Origin: Rebecca billardiae RCC1528
Lineage: Eukaryota > Protista > Haptophyta
Reading direction: 5' to 3'
Assembly (NCBI GenBank): GCA_965240325.2
Contig: OZ251230.1
Span: forward strand, 186,001 to 250,000
Length of the DNA: 64,000 nucleotides
Below are positions 7,284-17,885 of this stretch, in pieces. Below the pieces are notes generated by a model. The model was not told the DNA's origin. It saw only the letters and a program-made list of their open reading frames with translations, and did no database searches. The position numbers were made by a program, and so were the translations under genes. Within the stretch, counting starts at the first letter, position 1. Each line of letters starts with the position of its first letter.

Positions 7284-7900
7284 ATCGTGGCTCCGTTGGC
7301 GCTGTTTTTCTCTCATTCGCGGAGACAAACTGAAAAGGGCGCCCTTTCCGCCCCGAGAAAAAGAAACTCGCCATCTGGCGGCCCGCCGGCGCGGCCTCGC
7401 CGAGCCCGCCAAACGCATGCACAGCGCATAGCTAGTCGAACTCTTTCTGGTGACATTGCGATTGTGACGGGCGCCGTGAGGCCCGTACGTGCTCGATCGA
7501 AACACGAAAGTTCGGTCGCTGCTGCCATCAGAAGCGCACTGAACTGCAGGCTGCCGCCCTAAATGTCGGTACGCGCGGGCAGTCCGTCAGTGCCACGGTC
7601 TCGGAGGCTCGGCCAACCGTCGGGCCGGTCCGAGCCGCCGGGAGGCCCCGCCGTCTGCGGCCGTCTGGCCGATCTCGACCCCAGGAGCACGGGCCAATGT
7701 CGGCGAGTGACGGCTCGTCCTGAGGAGCCGACGCCGTGATCATCGTGGTGCTCATCGTGCCGCCAAGCATGCGCTCAACGAACGCGCCGTGCGCGCGCCA
7801 GACACACGACGCCCTCCAGGACGCCGCTCAAGGAGAAGGGCGCCAGCCGGCCAGCGCCACGGCAGTGGCTCAGGAGGGCGGCGGGGCAGCGGCGCGCGGC

Positions 7901-8596
7901 CTAGGCGCGGCGACGAAGCGCGACGAGTGCGGCGAGCGCAACGCCAGCGGCTGCGACGCCGGCGATCACCAGCAACGGCCGCCTCCGCGTCTCGTACATC
8001 CGCCGCTCCTCCGCGCCCGCGACAAAGACGGCGCGCAGCGGCCCGACGATCTCGACCACCTCGTCGATCAGCTTCTGCGCCACGCCCATGTCCTGCAGCT
8101 GCTTGACCAGGTGGCCTGCGGGGCGCGGGCGGGCGCGATGGCGAGGGCGAGGGGCGGGGGGCGGCGGTGGGCCTCTCGCGGCGGTGGGCGGCGAGTGCCG
8201 CGCGCGCGCCGCGCCTCACCGGCCACGAGGTCGAAGTGGGTCTCGTCGAGCCCAACAGCGAACAGCGCCCTGTGCTTGTCCATGATGAGCTGCGGCACGT
8301 CCAGCCCGGCCGGGACGCCAGTGAAGGCGATGGCGAGGAATGCTTCCTGTACGGCATGGCGCGCACGCGGCAGCGCAACGCTCGCCTGAGCCCGCGCGGC
8401 GGCTCGGCGGCGGCGCGCGGCGCGTCCGCGTGCATCGTACCTGGTGCTCCTTGAGGAACTTCATGTTGACCCCTTCGAAGAAGGGGGCGAGCTTCGGGTC
8501 GGTGACCAGGCGCGCGTAGAAGCCGTTGACGACGGACTTGAGCGCCTCCTTGCCACCGATGCGCTCGAGCAGGGTGCGCTTCGACAGGATCTCCAT
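7901..8596 (-). CDS. Group I truncated (2/2) hemoglobin with C-terminal transmembrane tail (exons 8596-8441, 8346-8220, 8115-7901)
   Basis: TLLERIGG, FYARL (TyrB10), LAPFF (CD1), HQ-EAFL, proximal His in MDKHRAL, HFDLVAGHL; GT-AG introns 8440-8347 and 8219-8116 join the frames. Confidence 0.9.
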
Positions 8597-8801
8597 GGTC
8601 GCGGGGGCCTACGCGGTCCAAGTTTCGCGGTTGCCGGCTCGGGCCGAAGACGACGGGTGGCTGGGCAAGCCGCAAGAAGTCCGGTGGAGTGGTGGATCCG
8701 GAACGTGCGATATCGGGAGGACGCCGAGACTGCGCAGCTCGTTTGCGCTGAGCCACCGCTGCGGAGCGCGGCCAAACCCTTGCCCCAGCCGGGCGCCAAG
8801 C

Positions 8802-11800
8802 ATGGCTCGGCGCACGACGCGCGGCAGCTGCGCGGTGCTGCCCGTACCGGTCGACCTGTGCACGCTCACCACGACGGTCAAAGATATCGACGACGAGCTC
8901 GACTTCACGTACTTCAAGAAGTCCTTCGAGGAGACCCGCTACCCGGGCTTCCGCAATTCGCTCGATTCGTCGTTTGGCTGGCTGCACCAGGTGTCGCATG
9001 GCGACCCCGCGGCCGCGGTGCGCCAGACGGTGGCGCAGGCGAAGGAGGTGCTCAAGCTCCTGGTGGACGATCTGCTCCCCGAGAGCAAGCAGGCCTTCGC
9101 GCGGGGCTGGGACGAGCCGCGTTGGCGCAGCGCGCTCAGCGCGGCGACGACGTTTGAGGCGGTGCGGCTGAGCGCGACTGAGCTGCTCGAGTGCGCGCGC
9201 GCGAGCAAGGGCGCGCCGCGCACGACTAGCATGGCTGACCGCTTGGTGCGCGCGGCCGATGTGAGCGTGGCCGCCCGCGCCCGCGACGCGACGACGTCCA
9301 CACGGCCGGGCGACGTGAGCGTGCCACGTGACGCGCCGCCGCTCGCCGCGCCGCCGCCGCCGCCGCCGCGTCATGCGGCCGTGGCCGCCGATGCCGATGC
9401 CGATGCGGACGAGGTGGCGAGGTCGCCCTCGGCCGACGTGAAGGTGGCACAGGAGGTGACGCAGGACGTGCTCACGGACAGCCATCGCGGCACTCGCGAG
9501 TCGCCCGTCACCATCTCCTCCTCGACGGAGGCGGAGGAGGAGGCGGCGGCCAACGGGGCGGAGCGGGCGCGGCTGCCGGCGCGCGGCGCGCCGCAGCCGC
9601 AGCCTCTCGACGCGGCGCCTCAGCTCGTGTGCGCGGGCGACGCGGAGCGCGCGAAGGCGCGGGCGTACATGGCGGACATGGCGACGGTGTGCGAGGTCCT
9701 CTCGGAGCAAGCAGCCGCGGAGGCTGCGCGGGTGGTGGCGCGCGAGGCGGAGCAGCGCGAGGCTGCAGAGTGCCTGGGTGTCCTCCTGCAGGACGGGCTC
9801 AGCAGCGCGGCCGAGGACGACGAGGACGCAGACGATGAGGACTACGTGGATGGCGGCGGCGCGGCGGCGGTTGGCGGGCGCAGGGCCGCAGCGCTCGGCG
9901 GCGTGGCCGCTGCGCGGGGGCGCAGGCGCGCGGCCGGGGCGAGCACCGCCGCCGCGGCCGAGCCTGGCGGCGCTGCCGCTGGCGGCGAGGCGGCCGGCCG
10001 CGCGGCGGCGGCAGAGGACGCCGTCGCGCCCGCGCCGCGCCCCAAGCCGCCTGCGCGCGCGCGCGCGCCGAAGCGCCCGTACCCCGCCTCCGCGCGGGCG
10101 GCGGCGGACGGCAGGGCGAGCACTGCCGCGCGCCGCTCCGCGCCTCCGGCAGCGGCGCGCCCGCCCTCTGCTGAGCCTGAGCGCGGCGCCGAGCGGGCGG
10201 CCGAGCGCCGCGCGGCGCCGCGCGCCGACCCGCCCGCCGCAGCGCGCGCGGCGGCGCCCGCCTCGGCCGCGCGCGCCGGGCGCGAGGCGGCATCGGCTGG
10301 CCACGCGGCCGCCCGCCCCTGTGCGCTCCCCGCGTTCTCCCGAGCCGAGTTTGAGCGCAGGCTGGGCGCCGAGGGGTGGCGCGTCGAGCGCAGACCGGCC
10401 GGGCGCACGGGCGACGAGCCGCCCGCCGGGCTGCCCGCGGACGAGGAGGACGAGGTGCTCTGCTTCTTGCCGCCGCGGTCGGCGCGCGAGCGCAGCGGCG
10501 GGGCGGCGCCGCCCGCGGCCGCGGAGCCGGGGCCGGGCGCGCCGGCCGCGGAGGCGGCCGAGCTCGTGCTGACGACGCGCGCACTCGCGTGGGCGTACAT
10601 GCACGGCCTCGGGCCGAGCGGCGAGCCCTTGGAGCGCACCGCCGTGCCGCCGCCCTCGTTCGAGCTCCAGCCCTCGGCGATAGCCAACCGGGATCTGAGC
10701 CGGGGGATGCGCGTGTCGGTGTACGTGCCGGCGGCGCTGATGAGCGAGGGCGCGGGCGGCGCGGCCGCGCTGCCCGCGTGCGCGCCCGCGGCGGAGGCGG
10801 TGGCGGAGGCGAAGGCGGAGGCGGTGGATGACAGCGGCAATTTCAGCTGGCTCATCGCCGACCTGATCTCGGCGAACGGCCAGATCGCGGAGCTCCTGCC
10901 GCGCGAGGTGGTGACGACGGACGAGCCGCAGCTCGAGGCGGCGGCCAGCGGGCCCGGCGGGCGCGGCTTGCAGCCCGCCGCGCCCGTGGCGGTGCACACG
11001 GACGACCTGAGCATCGCCTGGTACCCGCGGCTGCCGACCAGGCCGCAGTCGTGCGTGCCGGCGCAGACGGTGTGCGTGTCGCTCGTCGAGGGCGCGGGCG
11101 TCGAGGCCGTGCTGGCGGACGACCTGCTCGAGGGCGGCGTGGTCACGTCTGAGCCGGGCAACGACCCGGACGACTTGTCCGACCCCTCGGAGGAGGAGGA
11201 GGCGGCGCCGGAGGAGGCGGGCAGGCCGCCGCCGTGCCGGGTGCGCGTGCTGTTCGAGCACACGGGCGCGAACGAGATCGAGTACGTGCCGCTCGTCAGC
11301 TCGGTGCGGCTGGACGGCGGCGGGCTGCAGCCGCACCCGCCGCCCACGCCCGCAGGCTGGTACGCGCGCCTGCGCCGCGGCGACCCGATCCAAGTGCTGC
11401 TCAAGGGCTGCTGGCGCTCCGCCATCTTCATCGAGTTTGTCGGGCGCGAGGACCACGAGCATCTCGGAGCGATCTCGGCGGGCCCGGGAGCGCGGCGCGT
11501 GGAGAACACGCTCGAGCTGCGGCGCACGCAGCACGCGCTGCTCGCGGACGCGGAGCTGAGCGGCGGGCGCGCGCGGGCGGCCGCGCGGCAGCGGGCGGCG
11601 CGCGCGCACGCCGCCGCCGCCGGCGCGCGGCGCGACGCGCAGCCGGTGCGGCAGCCGCTGCCGCCGATCGTCGAGGGCGCGTGCGTGTACCGCGCCCTCG
11701 ACACCGCCACCCCCTCGCCCTGCGTGGGCGTGGTGCGCCGCGTGCGCGGCGCCGTCGCCGACGTGGAGTGGCGTGCGCGCGCTCAGCTCGAGACGTACGT

Positions 11801-14800
11801 GGCGAGGGCGGCAACGCGCGGACCCGCTGCTGCTGCTGCCGCCGCGGCGGCAGAAGCCAGCGTGCCCGGCGGCGCGGCCGGCGCGCCAGCCGCCGCCGCG
11901 GCCGCCGCCGGGTCGGGGGGCGTGGTCACGGCGGCTGTCGCGCCCGCGCCCGCCGCGCCGCCGGCCGGCGCGGACGCGAGCGCGCCCGCGCCCGCCGCGA
12001 GCGAGGCGGAGCCACCTGCTGCGGACGGCGCGCGCGCGGCGGCCGCCGCCGCGGATGATGGCGGCTCGCCCGCCGCCGCGGCGGCGCCCGCCGCCCCGTG
12101 TGTCGGCAGCCCCGAAGCCGCCGCCCCCGCGTGCCCGGCGGCGTGCCCGGCGCAGATCGAGACGGACGTGCCCGCGCACGAGCTGCGCAGCGTGCCGCCG
12201 CCTCTGTTCGCGCGCGGCCAGGAGCTGATGGCGGTGTGGGCGAAGCAGCGCAAGGAAGGGCTGTACTACGAAGCGACGGTGATGCAGCCGCCCGGGCTGG
12301 CGCGGCACCGCAAGGGCGCCTCGCGCGACGCGCTGGTATGGGAGTACGCCATCCGCTTCCACGACGACGAATCGCTCGCCGTGTGCGCCGAGGGCGACAT
12401 GGATGCCGACGTGCACGCCGTGCGAGCGCGCAACGAGCAGATTGTCGCGAAAGCGACGGAGGCGCGGCAGCGCAGGCTCGAGTGGATGCGGTGCATGCAG
12501 GCCAACGAGCGCCAGCTCAGCGCGAGCGGGGACCGACGCCGCCGCCGCGCGCCCGCCGAGCCCGCGGCCGCGGCCGCGCACCCGCCGGCGCCCGCTGCGC
12601 CGCCCGCGGCCGCCGCCGCGCCGCCGGCCGCCGCGCCGCCCGCGACCGCCGCCGCGCCGCCCGCGCCGCCGGCCGCCGGTGTGATCTCGGCGGAGCAGAT
12701 CGACATGTCGGCGGAGGAGGTTGAGCTGGCGGCGCTGGGCGCGGAGGGCAGCGGGGCCGCGAAGGCGCCCGCGGCGGCGCCCACGCTGCCGCGCGCGCTG
12801 CGGCGCACGGGGCGCGTGCCCACGCAGACGCGCCGGCTCGTGATGGAGACGGCGCCGCCGGGCTGCGTGCCGCAGCCTGCGCTCGACGACGTGGCGGCGG
12901 CGACGCGCGCGGCGGGGCGCGCGGCGGCGTCCGCGCCGCGCGCCGCGCACCCCGCGCACCCCGACGTCAGCCGCATGCTCGCCGTGGTGCACCTGAACCA
13001 CGACGAGGACGACGACGGCCCCCCGCTCGTGCTCGAGCGCCGCCACTGCCGCCCGCCGTGGCACTTCAAGCTCGACACGCGGCGCTCCGGCGGCGGCGGC
13101 GGCGGCGCGGCGCCCGTGCTCGCGGGCGAGTGGCAGACAGTCGTCGCGGCGCGCGGGCGGAGCATGGAGGGCTGCCTCCTCGCCGCCGCGCCGCCGGGCG
13201 GGGAGGGCAAGGTGCGGCAGCAGCTGGACGCGGGGCCGCGCGTGCTCGAGCAGGTGTACGTGCAGGACGAGGCGAGCGGCCGCTCGACCCTCGTCGCGCA
13301 GACCGTGGTGCCGGCGCGGCCGGAGGGCTGCGCACCGCTCGAGTGGCGCGCGGCGCACGCGTCGTCCGCGGTGCAGCTCGCGGCGGCCGACGAGCTCGAG
13401 CCGCACCACGCGTGCGCCGCGCCGATGCCGTCGGCGCCCGACGCGCCGACGGCGCCAGCCGCGCCCGCCGACGCCGCCCGCCCGCACGCCGCGCCGCCGC
13501 CGCCGCCGGTGCTGCCGGCCGCGTGCGCGCCGCCGCCCGACGCCGCCGTGACTCACGCGTACGCGTCGCTGCCGCGCGCGTGGCGGCTGGGCGTGATCCT
13601 CGGACCGACGGCCTCGGGCAAGTCGCGCGCGCTGCGCTTGTTTGCCGCGAGCCTGGACGGCGCCGCGCGCGCGAGCGTCGAGGCGTGCCTGCGCCCGCTT
13701 GCGTGGGAGCCCGACGCCGCCATCGTCGACCACCCGGACTTGCGCTCGGGCGGGCGCGCGCCGTTGCACGCGCTGCGCAGCGCGGGCTTCAACCACGTGC
13801 TCGCGATGCTGCGCGCGCACGGCACGCTCTCGGGCGGCGAGCGCGCGCGCGCGGAGCTCGCGCGGCGGCTCACGTTTGAGCACGCCGCGGTCGACGACCT
13901 CGGCGCGTGCGTCAACCCGGAGACCGCCAAGTCGATGGCGGCGGCGCTGCGCAGGCTGATGCTCGGGCGCGCCGCGGCCGCCGCGGCCGGCGCGCCGTGC
14001 GCCGCGCCGCGCGCCGTCGTCGTCACCACCGTCTCCGCCGAGCTCGTGCGCTGGCTGCAGCCCGAGTGGGTGCTGGTGCTGCCGGCCGCGCAGCTCGTGC
14101 GGCGCGACGCGGTGGCGCGCAGCGCGTGGGCGCTGCCCGTCACGCGCGTGCGCTTCGAGAACGGCGTCGCCGAGTCGGCGCCGCACCGGTACGCGCCGGC
14201 GGGCGCGCGCGCGCTCCAGCGCCGCGGCCGGCAGCCCGCGCCCAGCGGCGCCGACGGCCCGGCGAGGCCGCTGCCGCGCTACTCGTACGCGACGTTTGCG
14301 CTGAGCGCGCGGCTGCAGCCCGGGCCGGCCGCAAAGGCGCTCGCCCACTCGGTCGGGCTGCACCGCTACACGGGCAAGTCGGAGACGCACCTTCCGTGCG
14401 CGGTGCCGCTCGAGCTCAGCGCGTCCAAGATCGCGGTGATCGTCGGGCCGAGCGGCTCCGGCAAGTCGCAGCTGGTGGCGAGGCTGCTGGGCGCGGCGGG
14501 GCGCGACGCGGCGGCGGCGGCGCGGGCGCACGCGCCTCGCGACGCGCCGCCCGCCGACGCGCCGCCTCGCGACGCGCCGCCCGCCGACGCGCCGCCGCCC
14601 GACGCGCCGCCCGCGCCGCAGCCGCAGCCGGCGCGTGCGCCGGCCGGCGCGCCCGGGCTGAGTGTGCTCGAGTCCGTCGCGGCCGCGGGCGTCGCACAGC
14701 CCGAGGCGACGCTGCTCGCGCTGGGCGTGCCGCCGGCGCTGCTGCGCGCGCCGCGCGCCCGCCTCTCCGCTGGCGAGGAGTCGGTCGTGCGGCTGGCGGA

Positions 14801-16600
14801 GGAGCTGCGCGGCGGCGGCTGCTGCCTCGACGAGTTCACCTCGGCGCTCGACCGCGGCGCGGCGCGCGCGCTGTGCGCGCGGCTGCGCGCGCTCGTGCGC
14901 GCGCGCGGCCTGCGCTCCGTGCTCGTGGCGACGGCGCACGCGGACGCGGCGGCGTGGCTCGCCGCGCCCGCCGAGCCCGACGGCGCGGACGGCGCCGACG
15001 CCGTGCCTGTCTACTCGACCGCGGCGTGGCGGCTGCTGCGCGCGGACGAGCTCGCGCGCACGCGCGCGCACGCGGACGAGGCGCTCGCGAGCTGGGAGCG
15101 CGCGTGGCACGACTCGGCCACGGCGGCTGTGGCGAGCCTGCTCGCGCTGCCGCCGCGTGTGCAGCTCACGCTCACGCGCTGCCACGCGCAGATGTTTGAC
15201 GCCTTCTTCGCGCAGCACCACTACAAGGATCCCACCGTCGCCAAAGGCGCGCAGTGCTTTGTCGCGCGCTCGCTCGAGCTGCCGCCGCGCCCGGGCGCGG
15301 CCGCGCCCGCCGAGCGCGGCGGGGCGCCGCTCGGCGCCGCCGCGCACGGCGAGATGGTGGGCTTCGTCGCGGTGCTGCACCACCCGCAGCCTAGCGGCGT
15401 GACCAACCGCGAGTCGCGCCTCGTCGTGCTGCCCGACTACCAGGCGCGCGCAGACACGCGCGCCGCGCGCGCCGCGCGACGCCGCGCCGCGCGGCGCGCG
15501 CGCGACGCGCGCTCACGCGCGCCCGGCCCGCCGCCCGCGCGCCCCGCCCTGCCGCCGCCGCGCGCGCGCGCCGCGCACGCCCCCGCGCCCAGCAGTGCCG
15601 GCAGTACGCCTCGAAGATCTCCAACGCGATCGCCGAGCTGTACGACCTCTCGATACAGGGCGTGTTCCGCACGGTCACGCAGCACCCCTTCTTCGGCACG
15701 TACAGGGACGCCCACCCGCTCTGGCGGCAGAGCAGCACCAACCGCGTGCGGCAGCCGACGGGGCGCTACCCGGGGGAGCGCGGGAGCGAGGCCGCCGCCG
15801 CGCGCGCGCGCCACGTCGCGCGCAAGTCGTCGCACGCGTACAAGGGCGCGCGGGGCCTGCTGACGCGCAGGGTGGAGTGCAGCGCGTACGCGGACGCCGG
15901 CCTCGCCAACGAGCCGGCCCTTCAGCCCGTCGGCGCGCACATCAAGCTGCAGCTGACCACGAGCCTGCGCGAGCGGGACCTGCACGGCAAGCGCACGCTC
16001 ACGTGTGTGCTCGGCGCGCCGGCCCCCGGCGCGCCCGCGCAGTTCCGCCAGCTGATCGACAGGGCCACGGGCAGGGAGTTGCACCTGCGCTACGAGGACG
16101 AGGACGGGATCGTGCGCTATGTGCACGGAGCCACGCTGGTGCAGCAAGGCACGGGCAAGCGCGAGCGCGACGACGCACCGGCCGAGGCGGGCGGCGCGCC
16201 GTGCGCGCGCCGTGCGGCGGGGCCGCGCGCGCCGCCGCCCGAGCGGGGGGGTGGCCGCGGCCGAGGCGCGCACAGCGAGAGCACCGGCGACACGGGCACG
16301 CGCGGCGAGGAAGGGAGCGAGGAGGACGAGGACGAAGAGGAGGGCGAAGAGGAGGCGGACGAGGAGGACGAGGAGGACGAGGGCGAGGAGGAAGAGGGGA
16401 GCGATGGCGATGAGGCCTGCAGCGGCGGCCCTGCACCCGAGGGCGCGCACCAGCCGCCCAGGGCGCCCAACTCGCCGGCTCGCAAGCGCAGCCGCACTGG
16501 CGGCGACGGCTGCGATGAGGGGAGGCACGATAAGCAGCTGCACAACGGCTCTCGCCTGGCCATCCGGAGCGCGATCAGGACGATGCCGCCAGCGATATGA
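8802..16600 (+). CDS. Giant multidomain protein: WSD-like, MBD-like and Tudor/Agenet-like modules plus tandem ABC ATPase and GNAT (COG2401-type) module, acidic tail
   Basis: Walker A GPTASGKS (13602-13625) and GPSGSGKS (14445-14468); LSGGE and LSAGE signatures; LDEFTSALD; VATAH; HHY (15216-15224); SRLVVLPDYQ; GC-AG intron 15444-15592/15595 joins the frame containing TQHPFFGTYRDAHPLW; stop at 16600. Confidence 0.82.
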
Positions 16601-16775
16601 TTACTTAGCAGTGCCAGTGATGACTATGATAGTCATCAGTCCTTCGTCAACGACAACGCCAATGCACTACAAGTTGTTCGTTATGGTAGGGGTTGGCGGC
16701 GGCGGCCCGGGGCTCCCGCATCGCGGCGGATTTCCGATTGTGCCCGCCGACCAGCGCCTGATCTCGGTGCGGGCC

Positions 16776-17885
16776 ATGGCGTGCTGCGCGAGCCCCAAGA
16801 CGGTGGAGCGCGCCGGCGAAGGCGACGACGATGGCGGATCAAGCAAGCTTCCGATCGTGCTGGTCACGGGCGTGACAGGCTACGTCGGCTCGTGGGTCGT
16901 CAAGACGCTCGCTGAGATGGGCGGCTTTGCGGTGCGCGGCACGGTGCGCTCTCGCGCCGATGAGGCGAAGCTACGGGAGATCTGCCCCGGGATCGAGCTC
17001 GTGGAGGTCGACCTTGTGGACTCGTCGGACCAGGCGTGGAATGCCGCGCTCGCCGGCTGCGCCTATGTCATCCACGTCGCCGCAAAGTTTGCGCTCGACG
17101 CCAAGTCTGAGCAGGAGGTGGTCCTGCCCGCGGTCAAGGGCACGGAGCGCGTGATGCGCGCGGCCGCCGCCGCGGGCGTGTCGCGCGTCGTGCTCACCTC
17201 GGGCTTCAAGACCGCGACGCCCGGCTTCTACGGCAAGCATCCCAAGTTCCACTACACGCCGGACGACTGGACTGACGCGAAGGACCCAAAGCTGCCGCTG
17301 ATGGACAAGGCCAAGGTGCAGCAGGAGCAAGTGGCGTGGGAGCTGGCGCAGCAGCTCGGGCTCGAGCTGGTCGTGCTGCTGCCCGGCGGGATGTACGGCC
17401 CGCTGCTCCTGCCGCGCAAGAATGAGGTGACCGGGCACATCACCGCGCTCATGCTCGGCGAGCTCCCAGTGGTGCCGCCCGCCAGCATCCCGTGTGTCGA
17501 CATCCGCGACGCGGCGCGCGCGCACGTGCTCGCGCTGACGGCCGCTGGCGCGGCCGGCTCGCGCTTCCTTGTGTACAATCCGACGGGCGCGAGCGTGACA
17601 TACACGCAGATCGGCGAGTGGGTGCACGAGGCGCTGCCCGACTGGCCTGTCTCGCACAAGCGTGCGCCGTGGTTGGTGAGCAAGCTCTTCGGGCTGCTCA
17701 ACCCGGCGATCGCACCGCACCTGCGGCCGGAGTCGATCACCTTCGAAACGAACGGGACGGAGCTCACGCTGGGGCTGCGACGCGCCGACCTCATCTATCC
17801 CGAGGTGACGTTCAAAGCGATGGCGAGGTCGATCGCAGAGATTGGGCTTGTCGAGAACCCGCGCAAGGCTTCGTCGACGGTCTGA
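16776..17885 (+). CDS. Extended SDR (dihydroflavonol reductase / aldehyde reductase-like), probably catalytically altered
   Basis: VLVTGVTGYVG Rossmann motif, VRGTVRS, YVIHVA, PAVKGT, VDIRDAARAH; intronless; ATG at 16776. Confidence 0.88.
   Translation: MACCASPKTVERAGEGDDDGGSSKLPIVLVTGVTGYVGSWVVKTLAEMGGFAVRGTVRSRADEAKLREICPGIELVEVDLVDSSDQAWNAALAGCAYVIHVAAKFALDAKSEQEVVLPAVKGTERVMRAAAAAGVSRVVLTSGFKTATPGFYGKHPKFHYTPDDWTDAKDPKLPLMDKAKVQQEQVAWELAQQLGLELVVLLPGGMYGPLLLPRKNEVTGHITALMLGELPVVPPASIPCVDIRDAARAHVLALTAAGAAGSRFLVYNPTGASVTYTQIGEWVHEALPDWPVSHKRAPWLVSKLFGLLNPAIAPHLRPESITFETNGTELTLGLRRADLIYPEVTFKAMARSIAEIGLVENPRKASSTV

What the first reader, a model, noticed from the sequence alone, without database searches (positions are those of the whole stretch)
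8802..16600. Chromatin-reader modules fused to a phage/prokaryote-type tandem ABC-ATPase plus Mom-like GNAT: candidate new epigenetic modification enzyme
Seen: one continuous reading frame of about 2550 aa, with at least one GC-AG intron. It carries a WSD/WHIM-like motif (RWRSALSAATTFEAV..ELLE, about 9120-9190), an MBD-like segment (GWRVERRPAG..VLCFLP..TRALAWAYM, about 10350-10605) and several Tudor/Agenet-like barrels (RGDPIQVLLKGCWRSA at about 11375; RGQELMAVW..GLYYEATV..YAIRFHD at about 12210-12370). These are followed by two ABC-ATPase units and a GNAT with HHY and SRLVVLPDYQ. Established: ABC-ATPase+GNAT fusions (COG2401) are known mainly from prokaryotes and phages; the GNAT-fold Mom protein of phage Mu modifies DNA adenines; Tudor and MBD domains read methylated histones and methylated DNA. 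Inference: a horizontally acquired modification module has been domesticated and targeted to chromatin, possibly writing an unusual base or protein mark.
Basis: partly seen in the sequence, partly recalled or inferred. Interest (0 to 1): 0.9.

Follow-up and report, generated by a model that had tools for sequence, protein, structure and literature searches.

The report
Giant protist protein with phage ABC-GNAT
A very GC-rich protist gene encodes a roughly 2,550-residue, mostly low-complexity protein that ends in a phage-derived ATPase-acyltransferase unit (a kind predicted, never shown, to put acyl groups on DNA bases), but the claimed chromatin-reader domains in front of it could not be confirmed and its acyl-CoA loop is altered.

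Summary
The sequence observation holds. One + strand frame is open from 8802 to 15443, with GC3 of 0.9-1.0. It continues after a 152-nt GC-AG intron (15444-15595) to the stop at 16600, giving about 2,549 aa. The long minus-strand ORF is its in-register shadow.

The C-terminal 950 aa are securely a tandem ABC-ATPase plus GNAT (phrog_11143, E 5e-40; 445 HMMER relatives). The single-unit form is widespread in phages. The tandem form makes one clade found in haptophytes (including an intact E. huxleyi paralogue), dinoflagellates, Amoebophrya and a foraminifer.

ABC1 is degenerate and ABC2 canonical, as in the whole tandem clade. This copy alone has lost the family's invariant G-x-G-x-G acyl-CoA loop.

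The GNAT shows no detectable similarity to Mu Mom. Its PDB matches are short and confined to the conserved loop region of ordinary GNATs.

WSD and MBD assignments get no support. "Tudor" gets only sub-threshold hints for one barrel, which the closest homologue shares. No RNA data were available, so a single transcript is unproven.

The scan had already noted a paralogue of this family elsewhere in this genome (s1-332034).

Verdict: a new variant of a computationally predicted, uncharacterised enzyme family. The horizontally acquired module is supported, chromatin targeting is not shown, and the Mom-like label is rejected.

The parts
8802..15443 (+). Exon 1, 2,214 codons. Alternative upstream in-frame ATGs lie at 8559 and 8595.
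   Evidence: The ORF has no stop and GC3 is 0.9-1.0 in frame.
15444..15595 (+). Phase-0 GC-AG intron made of an imperfect (GC)n repeat. It has a CAGCAG tandem acceptor, so 15593 is also possible as the exon start.
   Evidence: The frame changes here and homology resumes after it. P0002 and P0003 have an intron at the same codon boundary. TRF finds period 2 with 76 copies.
15596..16600 (+). Exon 2: the second half of the GNAT, an unassigned small domain (about 15900-16250), an acidic repeat (16313-16404), a basic KRSR patch and the stop codon.
   Evidence: Pfam finds nothing in the tail.
8802..9206 (+). N-terminal non-repetitive region that holds the 'WSD-like' string (9120-9164). No family could be assigned.
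   Evidence: There are no hits in Pfam, PDB sequences or the ESM Atlas.
9834..10376 (+). Ala/Gly/Pro/Arg low-complexity stretch. Similar stretches lie at 11769-12161, 12489-12719 and 13401-13553.
   Evidence: Composition scan and TRF. GC1, GC2 and GC3 are all about equal here.
10374..10605 (+). 'MBD-like' segment, unconfirmed.
   Evidence: There is no Pfam or PDB hit. AlphaFold gives a helix, two strands and a helix at pLDDT 50-73 only.
10641..11801 (+). Beta-rich islands, the proposed barrels B1-B4. The fold is unproven.
   Evidence: ESM-Atlas feature leads point to Tudor/Agenet clusters at 0.76-0.82, below the reliable range. Predicted strands have pLDDT under 50. There are no Pfam hits.
12195..12428 (+). 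Barrel B5, the only segment with a weak Tudor-clan signal. It is shared with the N-terminus of homologue P0002.
   Evidence: SGF29_Tudor E 0.041 and DUF4537 E 0.18. BLASTP against P0002 residues 82-131 gives 39% identity and E 2e-4. The AlphaFold run with an alignment did not fold it.
12429..12518 (+). Long helix, possibly a coiled coil.
   Evidence: pLDDT 83-95; helix 70-117.
12972..13310 (+). Pre-ABC beta-rich segment. It resembles P0002 residues 200-275 by eye only.
   Evidence: BLASTP E 0.87, not significant. pLDDT about 50.
13512..14175 (+). ABC1: Walker A 13602-13625, signature LSGGE 13827-13847, Walker B with Asp in place of the catalytic Glu 13884-13916, no H-loop His (14016-14042). 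This is a degenerate site.
   Evidence: pLDDT is above 90. The same degeneracy appears in the family consensus.
14292..15140 (+). ABC2: Walker A 14445-14468, a DAPP-type repeat insert 14472-14696, signature LSAGE 14763-14783, Walker B plus catalytic Glu plus D-loop 14820-14852, H-loop His 14919-14945. This is a canonical site.
   Evidence: pLDDT 85-95 outside the insert.
15147..15800 (+). GNAT domain, split by the intron. The HHY motif (15207-15230) and beta-4 RLVVLPDYQ (15414-15443) are kept. The acyl-CoA loop reads C-R-Q-Y-A (15596-15610) instead of G-x-G-x-G. The downstream T-x-H-P..G.YRD...W block is kept.
   Evidence: Relatives hit Pfam Acetyltransf_1/7. The profile matches PDB GNATs.
7752..15383 (-). 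Antisense 'shadow' ORF, not a gene.
   Evidence: It is in register with the sense frame and its product is Arg-rich. The sense third position is almost never A.

Best explanation
This is a real nuclear gene of a GC-rich, haptophyte-like protist, with one conserved phase-0 GC-AG intron. It encodes a giant protein that is about 40% low-complexity. Its functional core is a C-terminal tandem ABC-ATPase plus GNAT acyltransferase, descended from the single-unit ABC-GNAT enzyme of phages. Shown: the module is intact in both ATPase folds. One nucleotide site is degenerate and one is catalytic, as in all tandem relatives. The GNAT keeps the family's HHY motif and beta-4 strand. The gene sits in a eukaryote-wide tandem clade. 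Inferred mechanism: ATP binding closes the two ABC halves into an intramolecular sandwich, with a single hydrolytic site acting as a timer. This clamps or gates a polymer substrate, most likely nucleic acid in a chromatin or ribonucleoprotein context. The GNAT then transfers, or in this copy perhaps only binds, an acyl group to an exocyclic amine of a base or to a nearby protein amine. The N-terminal 1,570 residues probably act as a flexible tether carrying a few small beta-rich binding modules, at least one of which may be Tudor-like. Because the invariant G-x-G-x-G acyl-CoA loop is replaced by C-R-Q-Y-A here, this paralogue is likely a weakened or regulatory version. Intact paralogues such as E. 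huxleyi EMIHUDRAFT_106499 would be the active enzymes.
For: Coding signal and open frame. Family membership: phrog_11143 E 4.7e-40; 445 HMMER relatives, 53 below 1e-10; alignment across the splice junction. High-confidence AlphaFold model of ABC1-ABC2-GNAT(N), pLDDT 85-95, with Foldseek matches to soluble tandem ABC ATPases (EttA/ABC-F, ABCE1, UvrA2, MCR A2) at E about 1e-6. The asymmetric sites are family-wide. Phage context: the gene lies among DnaB, primase, clamp loader, PolIII+UDG, dCMP deaminase, ParB-like, DNA methylase and, in one lineage, Mom genes. [quoted passage not shown] 2013). Eukaryotic relatives are fused to a Strawberry-notch helicase (Pelagodinium), an RlmL-type methyltransferase (Polarella) and UBA (Amoebophrya). 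The tandem clade is one starred group. Loop loss.
Against: No biochemical datum exists for any member of the family, so the substrate (DNA, RNA, protein or small molecule) is unknown. No RNA evidence could be obtained for this gene. The N-terminal part has no detectable homologues apart from one barrel in P0002. The acyl-CoA loop is altered, so catalysis may be lost. The Foldseek neighbours are generic for tandem ABCs and do not single out DNA-binding clades. The dinoflagellate fusions come from automatic gene models or transcript assemblies and could be chimeric.
Confidence: 0.45

Rival explanations
1. Pseudo-enzyme. The GNAT of this paralogue no longer binds acyl-CoA. The protein then works as an ATP-dependent scaffold, or as a regulator or decoy of the intact paralogues, rather than as a writer.
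For: G87 of the loop is invariant in 60 of 60 aligned relatives, and G89 and G91 are at least 90% conserved. Here the loop reads C-R-Q-Y-A. An intact paralogue exists in E. huxleyi, and the scan noted another in this genome.
Against: All other invariant GNAT positions are kept (HHY, R, V, P, Q, H-P, W). GNATs bind the pyrophosphate through backbone amides, and the last loop position is Ala, which the general Q/R-x-x-G-x-G/A motif allows (established knowledge). The closest homologue P0002 also departs from the consensus (G-M-S-I-G). GC3 gives no sign of decay.
Confidence: 0.25
2. Protein acetyltransferase. The module acetylates lysines or N-termini of chromatin or other proteins, with the ABC pair serving as a DNA- or partner-dependent switch. 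No nucleobase is modified.
For: The GNAT profile's PDB matches are ordinary GNATs, via short matches confined to the conserved beta-4/alpha-3 loop region (4e2a E 7.6e-5, SSAT2, PA4534). Relatives pass Pfam Acetyltransf_1. Some phage GNATs are known to acetylate host proteins (Rac; PMC7824862). A UBA fusion occurs in Amoebophrya.
Against: The phage copies sit in replication and DNA-metabolism modules rather than early host-takeover modules. The Sbno-helicase and RlmL fusions point to nucleic acid.
Confidence: 0.2
3. RNA acetyltransferase working like TmcA/NAT10. An ATPase feeds an RNA base, for example cytidine N4, into the GNAT.
For: The ATPase+GNAT logic is the same as in TmcA/NAT10 (established knowledge). 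A weak profile match to the NAT10 GNAT exists (E 0.05). Polarella P0148 is fused to an RlmL/UPF0020 RNA methyltransferase with its ferredoxin-like domain. The best tandem-ABC structural matches act on ribosomes (EttA, ABCE1).
Against: The ATPase is an ABC, not a helicase-type domain. The NAT10 match covers only 23 residues of motif A. Phage neighbours are DNA-replication genes. The Polarella model may be a chimera.
Confidence: 0.15
4. Gene-model artefact. The N-terminal 4.7 kb is a separate gene or a partly non-coding GC-rich stretch that stays open by chance, and only about 13500-16600 is the ABC-GNAT gene.
For: The low-complexity zones (9834-10376, 11769-12161) lack codon periodicity. At 88% GC they would stay open by chance fairly often (inference). 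No homologue covers the N-terminus and no RNA data exist.
Against: The same frame keeps GC3 at 0.93-0.99 with GC2 about 0.5 in every non-repetitive island from 8826 to 13500. There is no stop in 2,214 codons. Homologue P0002 likewise carries barrel-like N-terminal sequence in one ORF with its module, and shares barrel B5.
Confidence: 0.1

Closest known systems
Phage single-unit ABC-GNAT proteins (phrog_11143; e.g. Aeromonas phage PX29 gp085, Gordonia phage gene 2 'ATP-binding cassette-like protein'). Iyer et al. 2013 predicted them to acylate a DNA base, as cited in PMC7824862.
   Same: An ABC ATPase is directly followed by a GNAT with the F..HHY motif, the R-x-VV-x-P-x-[YFW]-Q strand and the H-P...W block. 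The profile match is E 4.7e-40.
   Different: Phage proteins have one ABC unit and are about 350-400 aa; all 75 ORFs identified among the top 80 IMG/VR loci are single or split. They presumably work as homodimers. Here two units are fused and one site is degenerate. A 1,570-aa N-terminal extension and an intron are present, and the G-x-G-x-G loop is lost.
Eukaryotic tandem ABC-ABC-GNAT proteins: E. huxleyi EMIHUDRAFT_106499 (P0131), Cladocopium goreaui CAL1136705 (P0159), Pelagodinium beii Sbno fusion (P0005), Polarella glacialis CAE8589794 (P0148), Amoebophrya (P0061), Nonionella stella (P0144).
   Same: They share the tandem architecture, the same degenerate-plus-canonical site pattern and the same clade on the tree.
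   Different: Those proteins keep Q-G-x-G-x-G and have no long N-terminal extension. Their accessory domains differ (Sbno helicase, RlmL methyltransferase, UBA). The window protein is only 24-38% identical to them. Its nearest relative is the unnamed P0002, which shares the intron site and one barrel.
Phage Mu Mom (Pfam PF25680), the GNAT-fold adenine-modifying enzyme.
   Same: Both belong to the acyltransferase superfamily in the broad sense. A Mom gene lies immediately downstream of the ABC-GNAT gene in one group of viral contigs (L027, L035, L037).
   Different: There is no detectable sequence relationship (hhalign probability 0.2%). Mom has no ATPase.
TmcA / NAT10 (Kre33) RNA cytidine acetyltransferases.
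   Same: An NTPase is fused to a GNAT, and ATP-driven presentation of a nucleic-acid base is the working analogy. There is a weak motif-A match (E 0.05).
   Different: The ATPase there is helicase-like, not an ABC. This protein has no DUF1726 or tRNA-binding domain. It is not a member of that family.
Soluble tandem ABC ATPases (ABC-F/EttA, ABCE1, UvrA).
   Same: Two ABC domains lie in one chain with no membrane domain, and the overall fold matches (Foldseek E 1e-6 to 1e-4).
   Different: Identity is 10-17%. None of the hallmark inserts of those families were seen. No member of those families carries a GNAT.

Membership tests
Phage-type ABC-GNAT family (phrog_11143) | Significant match to the family profile | tested here: met
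   phrog_11143 E 4.7e-40 over five stretches. Exon 2 matches profile positions 276-349.
Phage-type ABC-GNAT family (phrog_11143) | ABC ATPase with Walker A, signature and Walker B motifs immediately upstream of the GNAT | tested here: met
   ABC2 has GPSGSGKS, LSAGE and LDEFTSALD plus the H-loop His. pLDDT is above 85.
Phage-type ABC-GNAT family (phrog_11143) | GNAT with the invariant HHY motif and the R-x-V-V-x-P-x-x-Q strand | tested here: met
   FAQHHY at 15207 and SRLVVLPDYQ at 15414. These positions are invariant in 60 of 60 relatives.
Phage-type ABC-GNAT family (phrog_11143) | Q-G-x-G-x-G/A acyl-CoA loop (G87 invariant; G89 and G91 at least 90% conserved) | tested here: not met
   The loop reads Q-(Q)-C-R-Q-Y-A after the intron. 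No frame of the intron encodes G-x-G-x-G.
Mom family (Pfam PF25680) | Sequence or profile similarity to Mom | tested here: not met
   hhalign of the family GNAT profile against Mu Mom gives probability 0.2%. No Mom hit appears in any Pfam scan of the window protein or its relatives.
Tudor/Agenet 'royal family' domains | Pfam match at or above the gathering score | tested here: not met
   The best hit is SGF29_Tudor at 14.4 bits against a 23.8-bit cut-off, on 12195-12428 only. The other proposed barrels have no hit at E up to 10.
Tudor/Agenet 'royal family' domains | Five-stranded SH3-like barrel in a confident structure model | tested here: inconclusive
   The single-sequence model has pLDDT under 50 in these parts. 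The model built with an alignment did not fold B5. ESM-Atlas features point to Tudor/Agenet clusters at 0.76-0.85, below the reliable range.
Tudor/Agenet 'royal family' domains | Aromatic cage for methyl-lysine or methyl-arginine | not testable with these tools
   This needs a reliable model or alignment, and neither was obtained.
Methyl-CpG-binding domain (MBD, PF01429) | Profile match or MBD fold | tested here: not met
   There is no Pfam or PDB-sequence hit for 10290-10640 at E up to 10. The model shows only a low-confidence helix plus two strands.
WHIM/WSD (PF15612-15614) and DDT | Profile match | tested here: not met
   There is no hit for 8802-9260 in Pfam or PDB sequences, and the ESM Atlas gives no lead.
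TmcA/NAT10 | Helicase-type ATPase, DUF1726 and tRNA-binding domain flanking the GNAT | tested here: not met
   The ATPase is an ABC. There is only a 23-residue motif-A match to NAT10 at E 0.05.

The most novel reading that the evidence does not exclude
The protein is a chromatin-tethered writer of a new nucleic-acid mark. Tudor-like barrels in the N-terminal tail dock it on modified histones or other chromatin proteins. The ATP-gated ABC-GNAT module, alone or with intact paralogues, places an acyl group on a DNA base. That would give haptophytes and dinoflagellates a phage-derived acyl-DNA epigenetic system.
Probability: 0.1. Interest if true: 0.9.

Novelty: new variant of a known kind. Interest (0 to 1): 0.55.

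Why it matters
The ABC-GNAT family is one of the few phage enzyme families predicted to make a still unknown acyl modification of DNA, and nobody has tested it. This work shows that the module was taken up by marine protists, duplicated into a tandem form with one catalytic and one degenerate ATP site, and joined to different nucleic-acid or chromatin partners: a Strawberry-notch helicase, an RlmL-type methyltransferase, UBA, and here a giant tail with possible Tudor-like barrels. That makes the question experimentally approachable from the eukaryotic side, in organisms (dinoflagellates, haptophytes) whose DNA chemistry is already unusual. This particular copy is also a natural variant lacking the acyl-CoA loop glycines. 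It can therefore serve as a built-in comparison for what the loop does.

Tried and rejected
1. Minus-strand gene: rejected. The ORF 7752..15383 is the in-register shadow of a sense frame whose third positions are almost never A.
2. Homologues of the N-terminal part: two word-index searches (full-length query with region 497-900, and the 404-aa piece) found nothing. PDB phmmer on four pieces found nothing relevant.
3. A profile of the proposed barrels: the seven pieces do not align with each other except B5 with P0002 residues 80-158, so no profile was built.
4. Single-sequence AlphaFold of 10290-12560: mean pLDDT 42, not usable for a fold search.
5. RNA evidence: no sequencing run was listed for 8700-16700.
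6. Metagenome scan with the subfamily alignment A2: 599 pattern matches, none confirmed.
7. Exact look-up of the neighbouring epimerase, to name the organism: not on record.
8. PADLOC mad3/mad8 hits (E 8e-15 and 1.5e-8): judged generic ABC similarity. The mad3 match covers only the signature/Walker B part.
9. Similarity of the pre-ABC segment to P0002: seen by eye, but BLASTP E is 0.87, so it is not claimed.
10. The papers that should describe the family (Iyer et al. 2013 NAR; Krishnan et al. 2020 NAR) are not held. Only the secondary statement in PMC7824862 could be read.
11. Alternative splice choices that would restore G-x-G-x-G: none exists in any frame of 15444-15620.

Full report
OBSERVATION.

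The window is 0.77-0.83 GC between 9 and 16 kb, against 0.60-0.68 in the flanks. Two very long ORFs overlap there: + 8526..15863 and - 7752..15383. They use the same codon register.

In the + frame the third codon position is 0.9-1.0 GC and almost never A, while the second position is about 0.5 in all non-repetitive parts. That is the signature of sense coding, and it also explains why the antisense frame has no stops. The antisense product is an Arg-rich string. The + product contains recognisable motifs.

An ATG at 8802 opens 2,214 codons that end with ...SRLVVLPDYQ at 15443. After that point the periodicity moves to another frame, which runs to a stop at 16600.

The gap, 15444-15595, starts with GC and ends with a CAGCAG tandem acceptor. 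It consists of an imperfect (GC)n repeat.

Three things show this is an intron:
- Alignments to intron-less relatives continue straight across the junction.
- The PHROG profile that matches exon 1 also matches exon 2 at its C-terminal positions.
- The two closest homologues, P0002 and P0003, carry a read-through insertion or a GT-starting read-through at exactly the same phase-0 boundary after the Gln codon.

Upstream in-frame ATGs at 8559 and 8595 lie in sequence that already shows some GC3 signal, so the true start is uncertain by about 80 codons. The next gene, an NAD-dependent epimerase, starts at 16776.

THE SECURE PART: A TANDEM ABC-ATPase PLUS GNAT.

Pfam and NCBIfam see ABC P-loops at about 13600 and 14445. 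PHROGs gives phrog_11143 (function unknown) at E 4.7e-40.

An exhaustive HMMER search of 1.84 billion representatives found 445 relatives: 53 below 1e-10 and the best at 3e-44 with 38% identity. No near-identical protein is on record.

Seventy-four of the 168 fetched proteins carry the signature HHY...R-x-VV-x-P-x-[YFW]-Q-G-x-G-x-[GA]. In a 60-sequence alignment of the GNAT part, H-H-Y, R, V, P, Q and the first loop Gly are invariant. Relatives pass Pfam Acetyltransf_1 or approach the Acetyltransf_7 cut-off. The family profile finds ordinary GNAT structures in the PDB (4e2a at 7.6e-5; NAT10 only at 0.05).

AlphaFold with a 39-row alignment gave pLDDT 85-95 for the whole of ABC1, ABC2 and the first half of the GNAT. 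Foldseek matched soluble tandem ABC ATPases (DppD, EttA/ABC-F, ABCE1, MCR component A2, UvrA2) at E about 1e-6 and 10-17% identity. This confirms the fold but does not single out a functional clade.

ABC1 has Asp in place of the catalytic Glu and no H-loop His. ABC2 is canonical. The family consensus shows the same pattern (DDF against DEFTS..D plus His), so one degenerate and one hydrolytic site is a property of the whole tandem clade. This agrees with the earlier first-stage note s1-358216.

THE ODD PART OF THE MODULE.

Where every relative has Q-G-x-G-x-G/A (the GNAT beta-4/alpha-3 loop that holds the pyrophosphate of acyl-CoA), this gene reads Q-C-R-Q-Y-A, or Q-Q-C-R-Q-Y-A with the other acceptor. 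No frame of the intron or its borders encodes the glycines. The nearest homologue P0002 also deviates (G-M-S-I-G).

Everything else that is invariant in the GNAT is retained. I therefore cannot tell whether the domain is active, uses another donor, or is a pseudo-enzyme.

WHERE THE FAMILY LIVES.

Single-unit ABC-GNAT proteins of 350-400 aa are common in phages. There are 75 records in INPHARED, including T4-like Aeromonas phages, Vibrio, Gordonia, Streptococcus, Lactococcus, Porphyromonas, Burkholderia and Pseudomonas phages. IMG/VR holds at least 544 confirmed loci. All 75 ORFs identified among the top 80 are single-unit or split.

Their neighbours are replication and DNA-metabolism genes. 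Examples are SNF2, DnaB, PolIII-alpha+UDG, clamp loader and RecA in L002; dCMP deaminase in L004; and a ParB-like or 'DNA modification methylase' gene ahead of the terminase in Streptococcus prophage Javan511.

Among 75 immediate neighbours there were:
- DnaB, 5
- the Mom family PF25680, 4
- DUF932, 4
- ParB_N, 3
- small terminase, 3
- primase and clamp-loader domains

The Mom neighbours (L027, L035, L037) look like one phage lineage.

[quoted passage not shown] It places the system in a few jumbo phages (PMC7824862, citing Iyer et al. 2013). The primary paper is not held.

THE EUKARYOTIC CLADE.

Tandem forms come from the following organisms:
- Emiliania huxleyi (EMIHUDRAFT_106499, 876 aa, loop intact)
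- Cladocopium goreaui
- Polarella glacialis (fused to an RlmL/UPF0020 methyltransferase)
- Pelagodinium beii (fused to a Strawberry-notch helicase)
- Gymnodinium smaydae
- Amoebophrya (with UBA)
- the foraminifer Nonionella stella
- MMETSP transcriptomes

On a tree of the ABC2-GNAT unit (102 rows), all 32 tandem rows plus two short fragments form one set with SH-aLRT 96. The window's nearest neighbour is P0002. The tree is unrooted. The direction phage-to-eukaryote is inferred from distribution and from the derived tandem state.

The scan had already recorded a paralogue on another piece of this genome (s1-332034). My results agree with its family-level reading and were obtained independently.

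THE MOM-LIKE LABEL.

hhalign of the family GNAT profile against Mu Mom gave probability 0.2%. Pfam's Mom model never hits the window protein or its relatives. The two share only the superfamily fold at most. The label should be dropped, although Mom genes can sit next to ABC-GNAT genes in phages.

THE N-TERMINAL 1,570 RESIDUES.

About 24% of this part is Ala, and it holds several long A/G/P/R/S stretches (9834-10376, 11769-12161, 12489-12719, 13401-13553). Between them lie islands with clean codon periodicity.

- WSD/WHIM (8802-9260): no hit in Pfam at E up to 10, in PDB sequences or in the ESM Atlas.
- MBD (10290-10640): no hit. The single-sequence model shows a helix, two strands and a helix at pLDDT 50-73, too weak to interpret.
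- Barrels B1-B4 (10641-11801): no Pfam or PDB hit. ESM-Atlas features point to Tudor/Agenet/Spin-Ssty clusters at 0.76-0.82, a range that shuffled sequences often reach.
- Barrel B5 (12195-12428): SGF29_Tudor E 0.04 and DUF4537 E 0.18, both below the curated cut-offs. B5 is 39% identical (pairwise E 2e-4) to residues 82-131 of P0002. The N-terminus of P0002 also draws Tudor/Agenet feature leads at 0.81-0.85.
- The alignment-based model did not fold B5.

So one shared, possibly Tudor-like barrel precedes the module in the two closest relatives. The rest is unassigned. No full-length or fragmentary homologue of the N-terminal part was found. No RNA run could be listed, so the single-transcript claim rests on the uninterrupted frame and on the P0002 architecture.

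HOW IT MOST LIKELY WORKS.

Shown: there are two ABC domains in one chain, with one catalytic and one degenerate site, followed directly by a GNAT.

Inferred: ATP closes the two halves, and hydrolysis at the single active site resets them. This cycle gates or clamps a polymer substrate for the GNAT, which transfers an acyl group to an amine.

Phage neighbourhoods and the eukaryotic fusion partners favour nucleic acid (DNA, perhaps RNA) or chromatin-bound proteins as the target. The long tail would then be a tether with small binding modules. For this copy the altered CoA loop makes a weakened or regulatory role a serious alternative.

I give about 0.45 to the ATP-gated acyltransferase on nucleic acid or chromatin. 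The rivals are pseudo-enzyme 0.25, protein acetyltransferase 0.2, RNA acetyltransferase 0.15 and mis-joined gene model 0.1. These overlap and are not exclusive.

VERDICT.

The sequence observation is sound, and the horizontally derived module is real and interesting. However, the headline (chromatin readers fused to a Mom-like writer) is only partly supported: Mom-like is rejected, WSD and MBD are unsupported, and Tudor is a weak lead for one barrel. The family itself has been predicted in the literature and was already met by this scan. This gene is a new variant of it, tandem, with a giant N-terminal tail and a changed acyl-CoA loop.

Noticed in passing
window 15444-15595: The intron is essentially an imperfect (GC)n dinucleotide repeat (TRF period 2, about 76 copies). 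It ends in a CAGCAG tandem acceptor, so two in-frame products differing by one Gln are possible.
   Followed up: partly
window 14472-14696: A DAPP(A/R/P)-type 15/30-nt repeat encodes a proline-rich insert inside ABC2, between Walker A and the signature motif. It has low pLDDT in the model and is absent from relatives.
   Followed up: partly
window 16776-17885: A separate + strand gene for an NAD-dependent epimerase/dehydratase (Pfam Epimerase, E 6e-21) starts only about 175 nt after the stop of the giant gene. Its exact protein is not on record in the public gene index.
   Followed up: yes
window 15900-16600: After the GNAT come a small unassigned region (HLRYEDEDGIVRYV resembles a PB1- or ubiquitin-like strand pattern by eye only), a Glu/Asp repeat (16313-16404) and a basic PARKRSR patch that could be a nuclear localisation signal. 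Pfam finds nothing.
   Followed up: partly
L027:1010-1654, L035:3123-3767, L037:5577-6221 (IMG/VR contigs): A Mom-family gene (phmmer against Mu Mom, E 2e-12; Pfam PF25680 down to 5e-38) lies immediately downstream of the phage ABC-GNAT gene. The three contigs probably represent one phage lineage.
   Followed up: partly
P0005 (Pelagodinium beii, 2,734 aa), P0148 (Polarella glacialis), P0061 (Amoebophrya): Dinoflagellate and syndinian relatives fuse the tandem ABC-GNAT to a complete Strawberry-notch helicase (AAA_34, Helicase_C_4, SBNO), to an RlmL/UPF0020 methyltransferase, or to UBA domains. These are automatic models and could be chimeric.
   Followed up: partly
L006 (Streptococcus phage Javan511, 13453-15019 of the record): In streptococcal prophages the ABC and GNAT halves are separate ORFs, annotated 'putative ABC iron siderophore transporter' and 'hypothetical'. 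They follow a small 'DNA modification methylase'/ParB-like gene, just upstream of the terminase. The ABC annotation as a transporter is probably wrong.
   Followed up: partly
window 7700-8800: Codon-position GC signal switches frame several times upstream of 8802. In-frame ATGs at 8559 and 8595 precede the proposed start, so the 5' end of the gene, or a further upstream exon, is unresolved.
   Followed up: no
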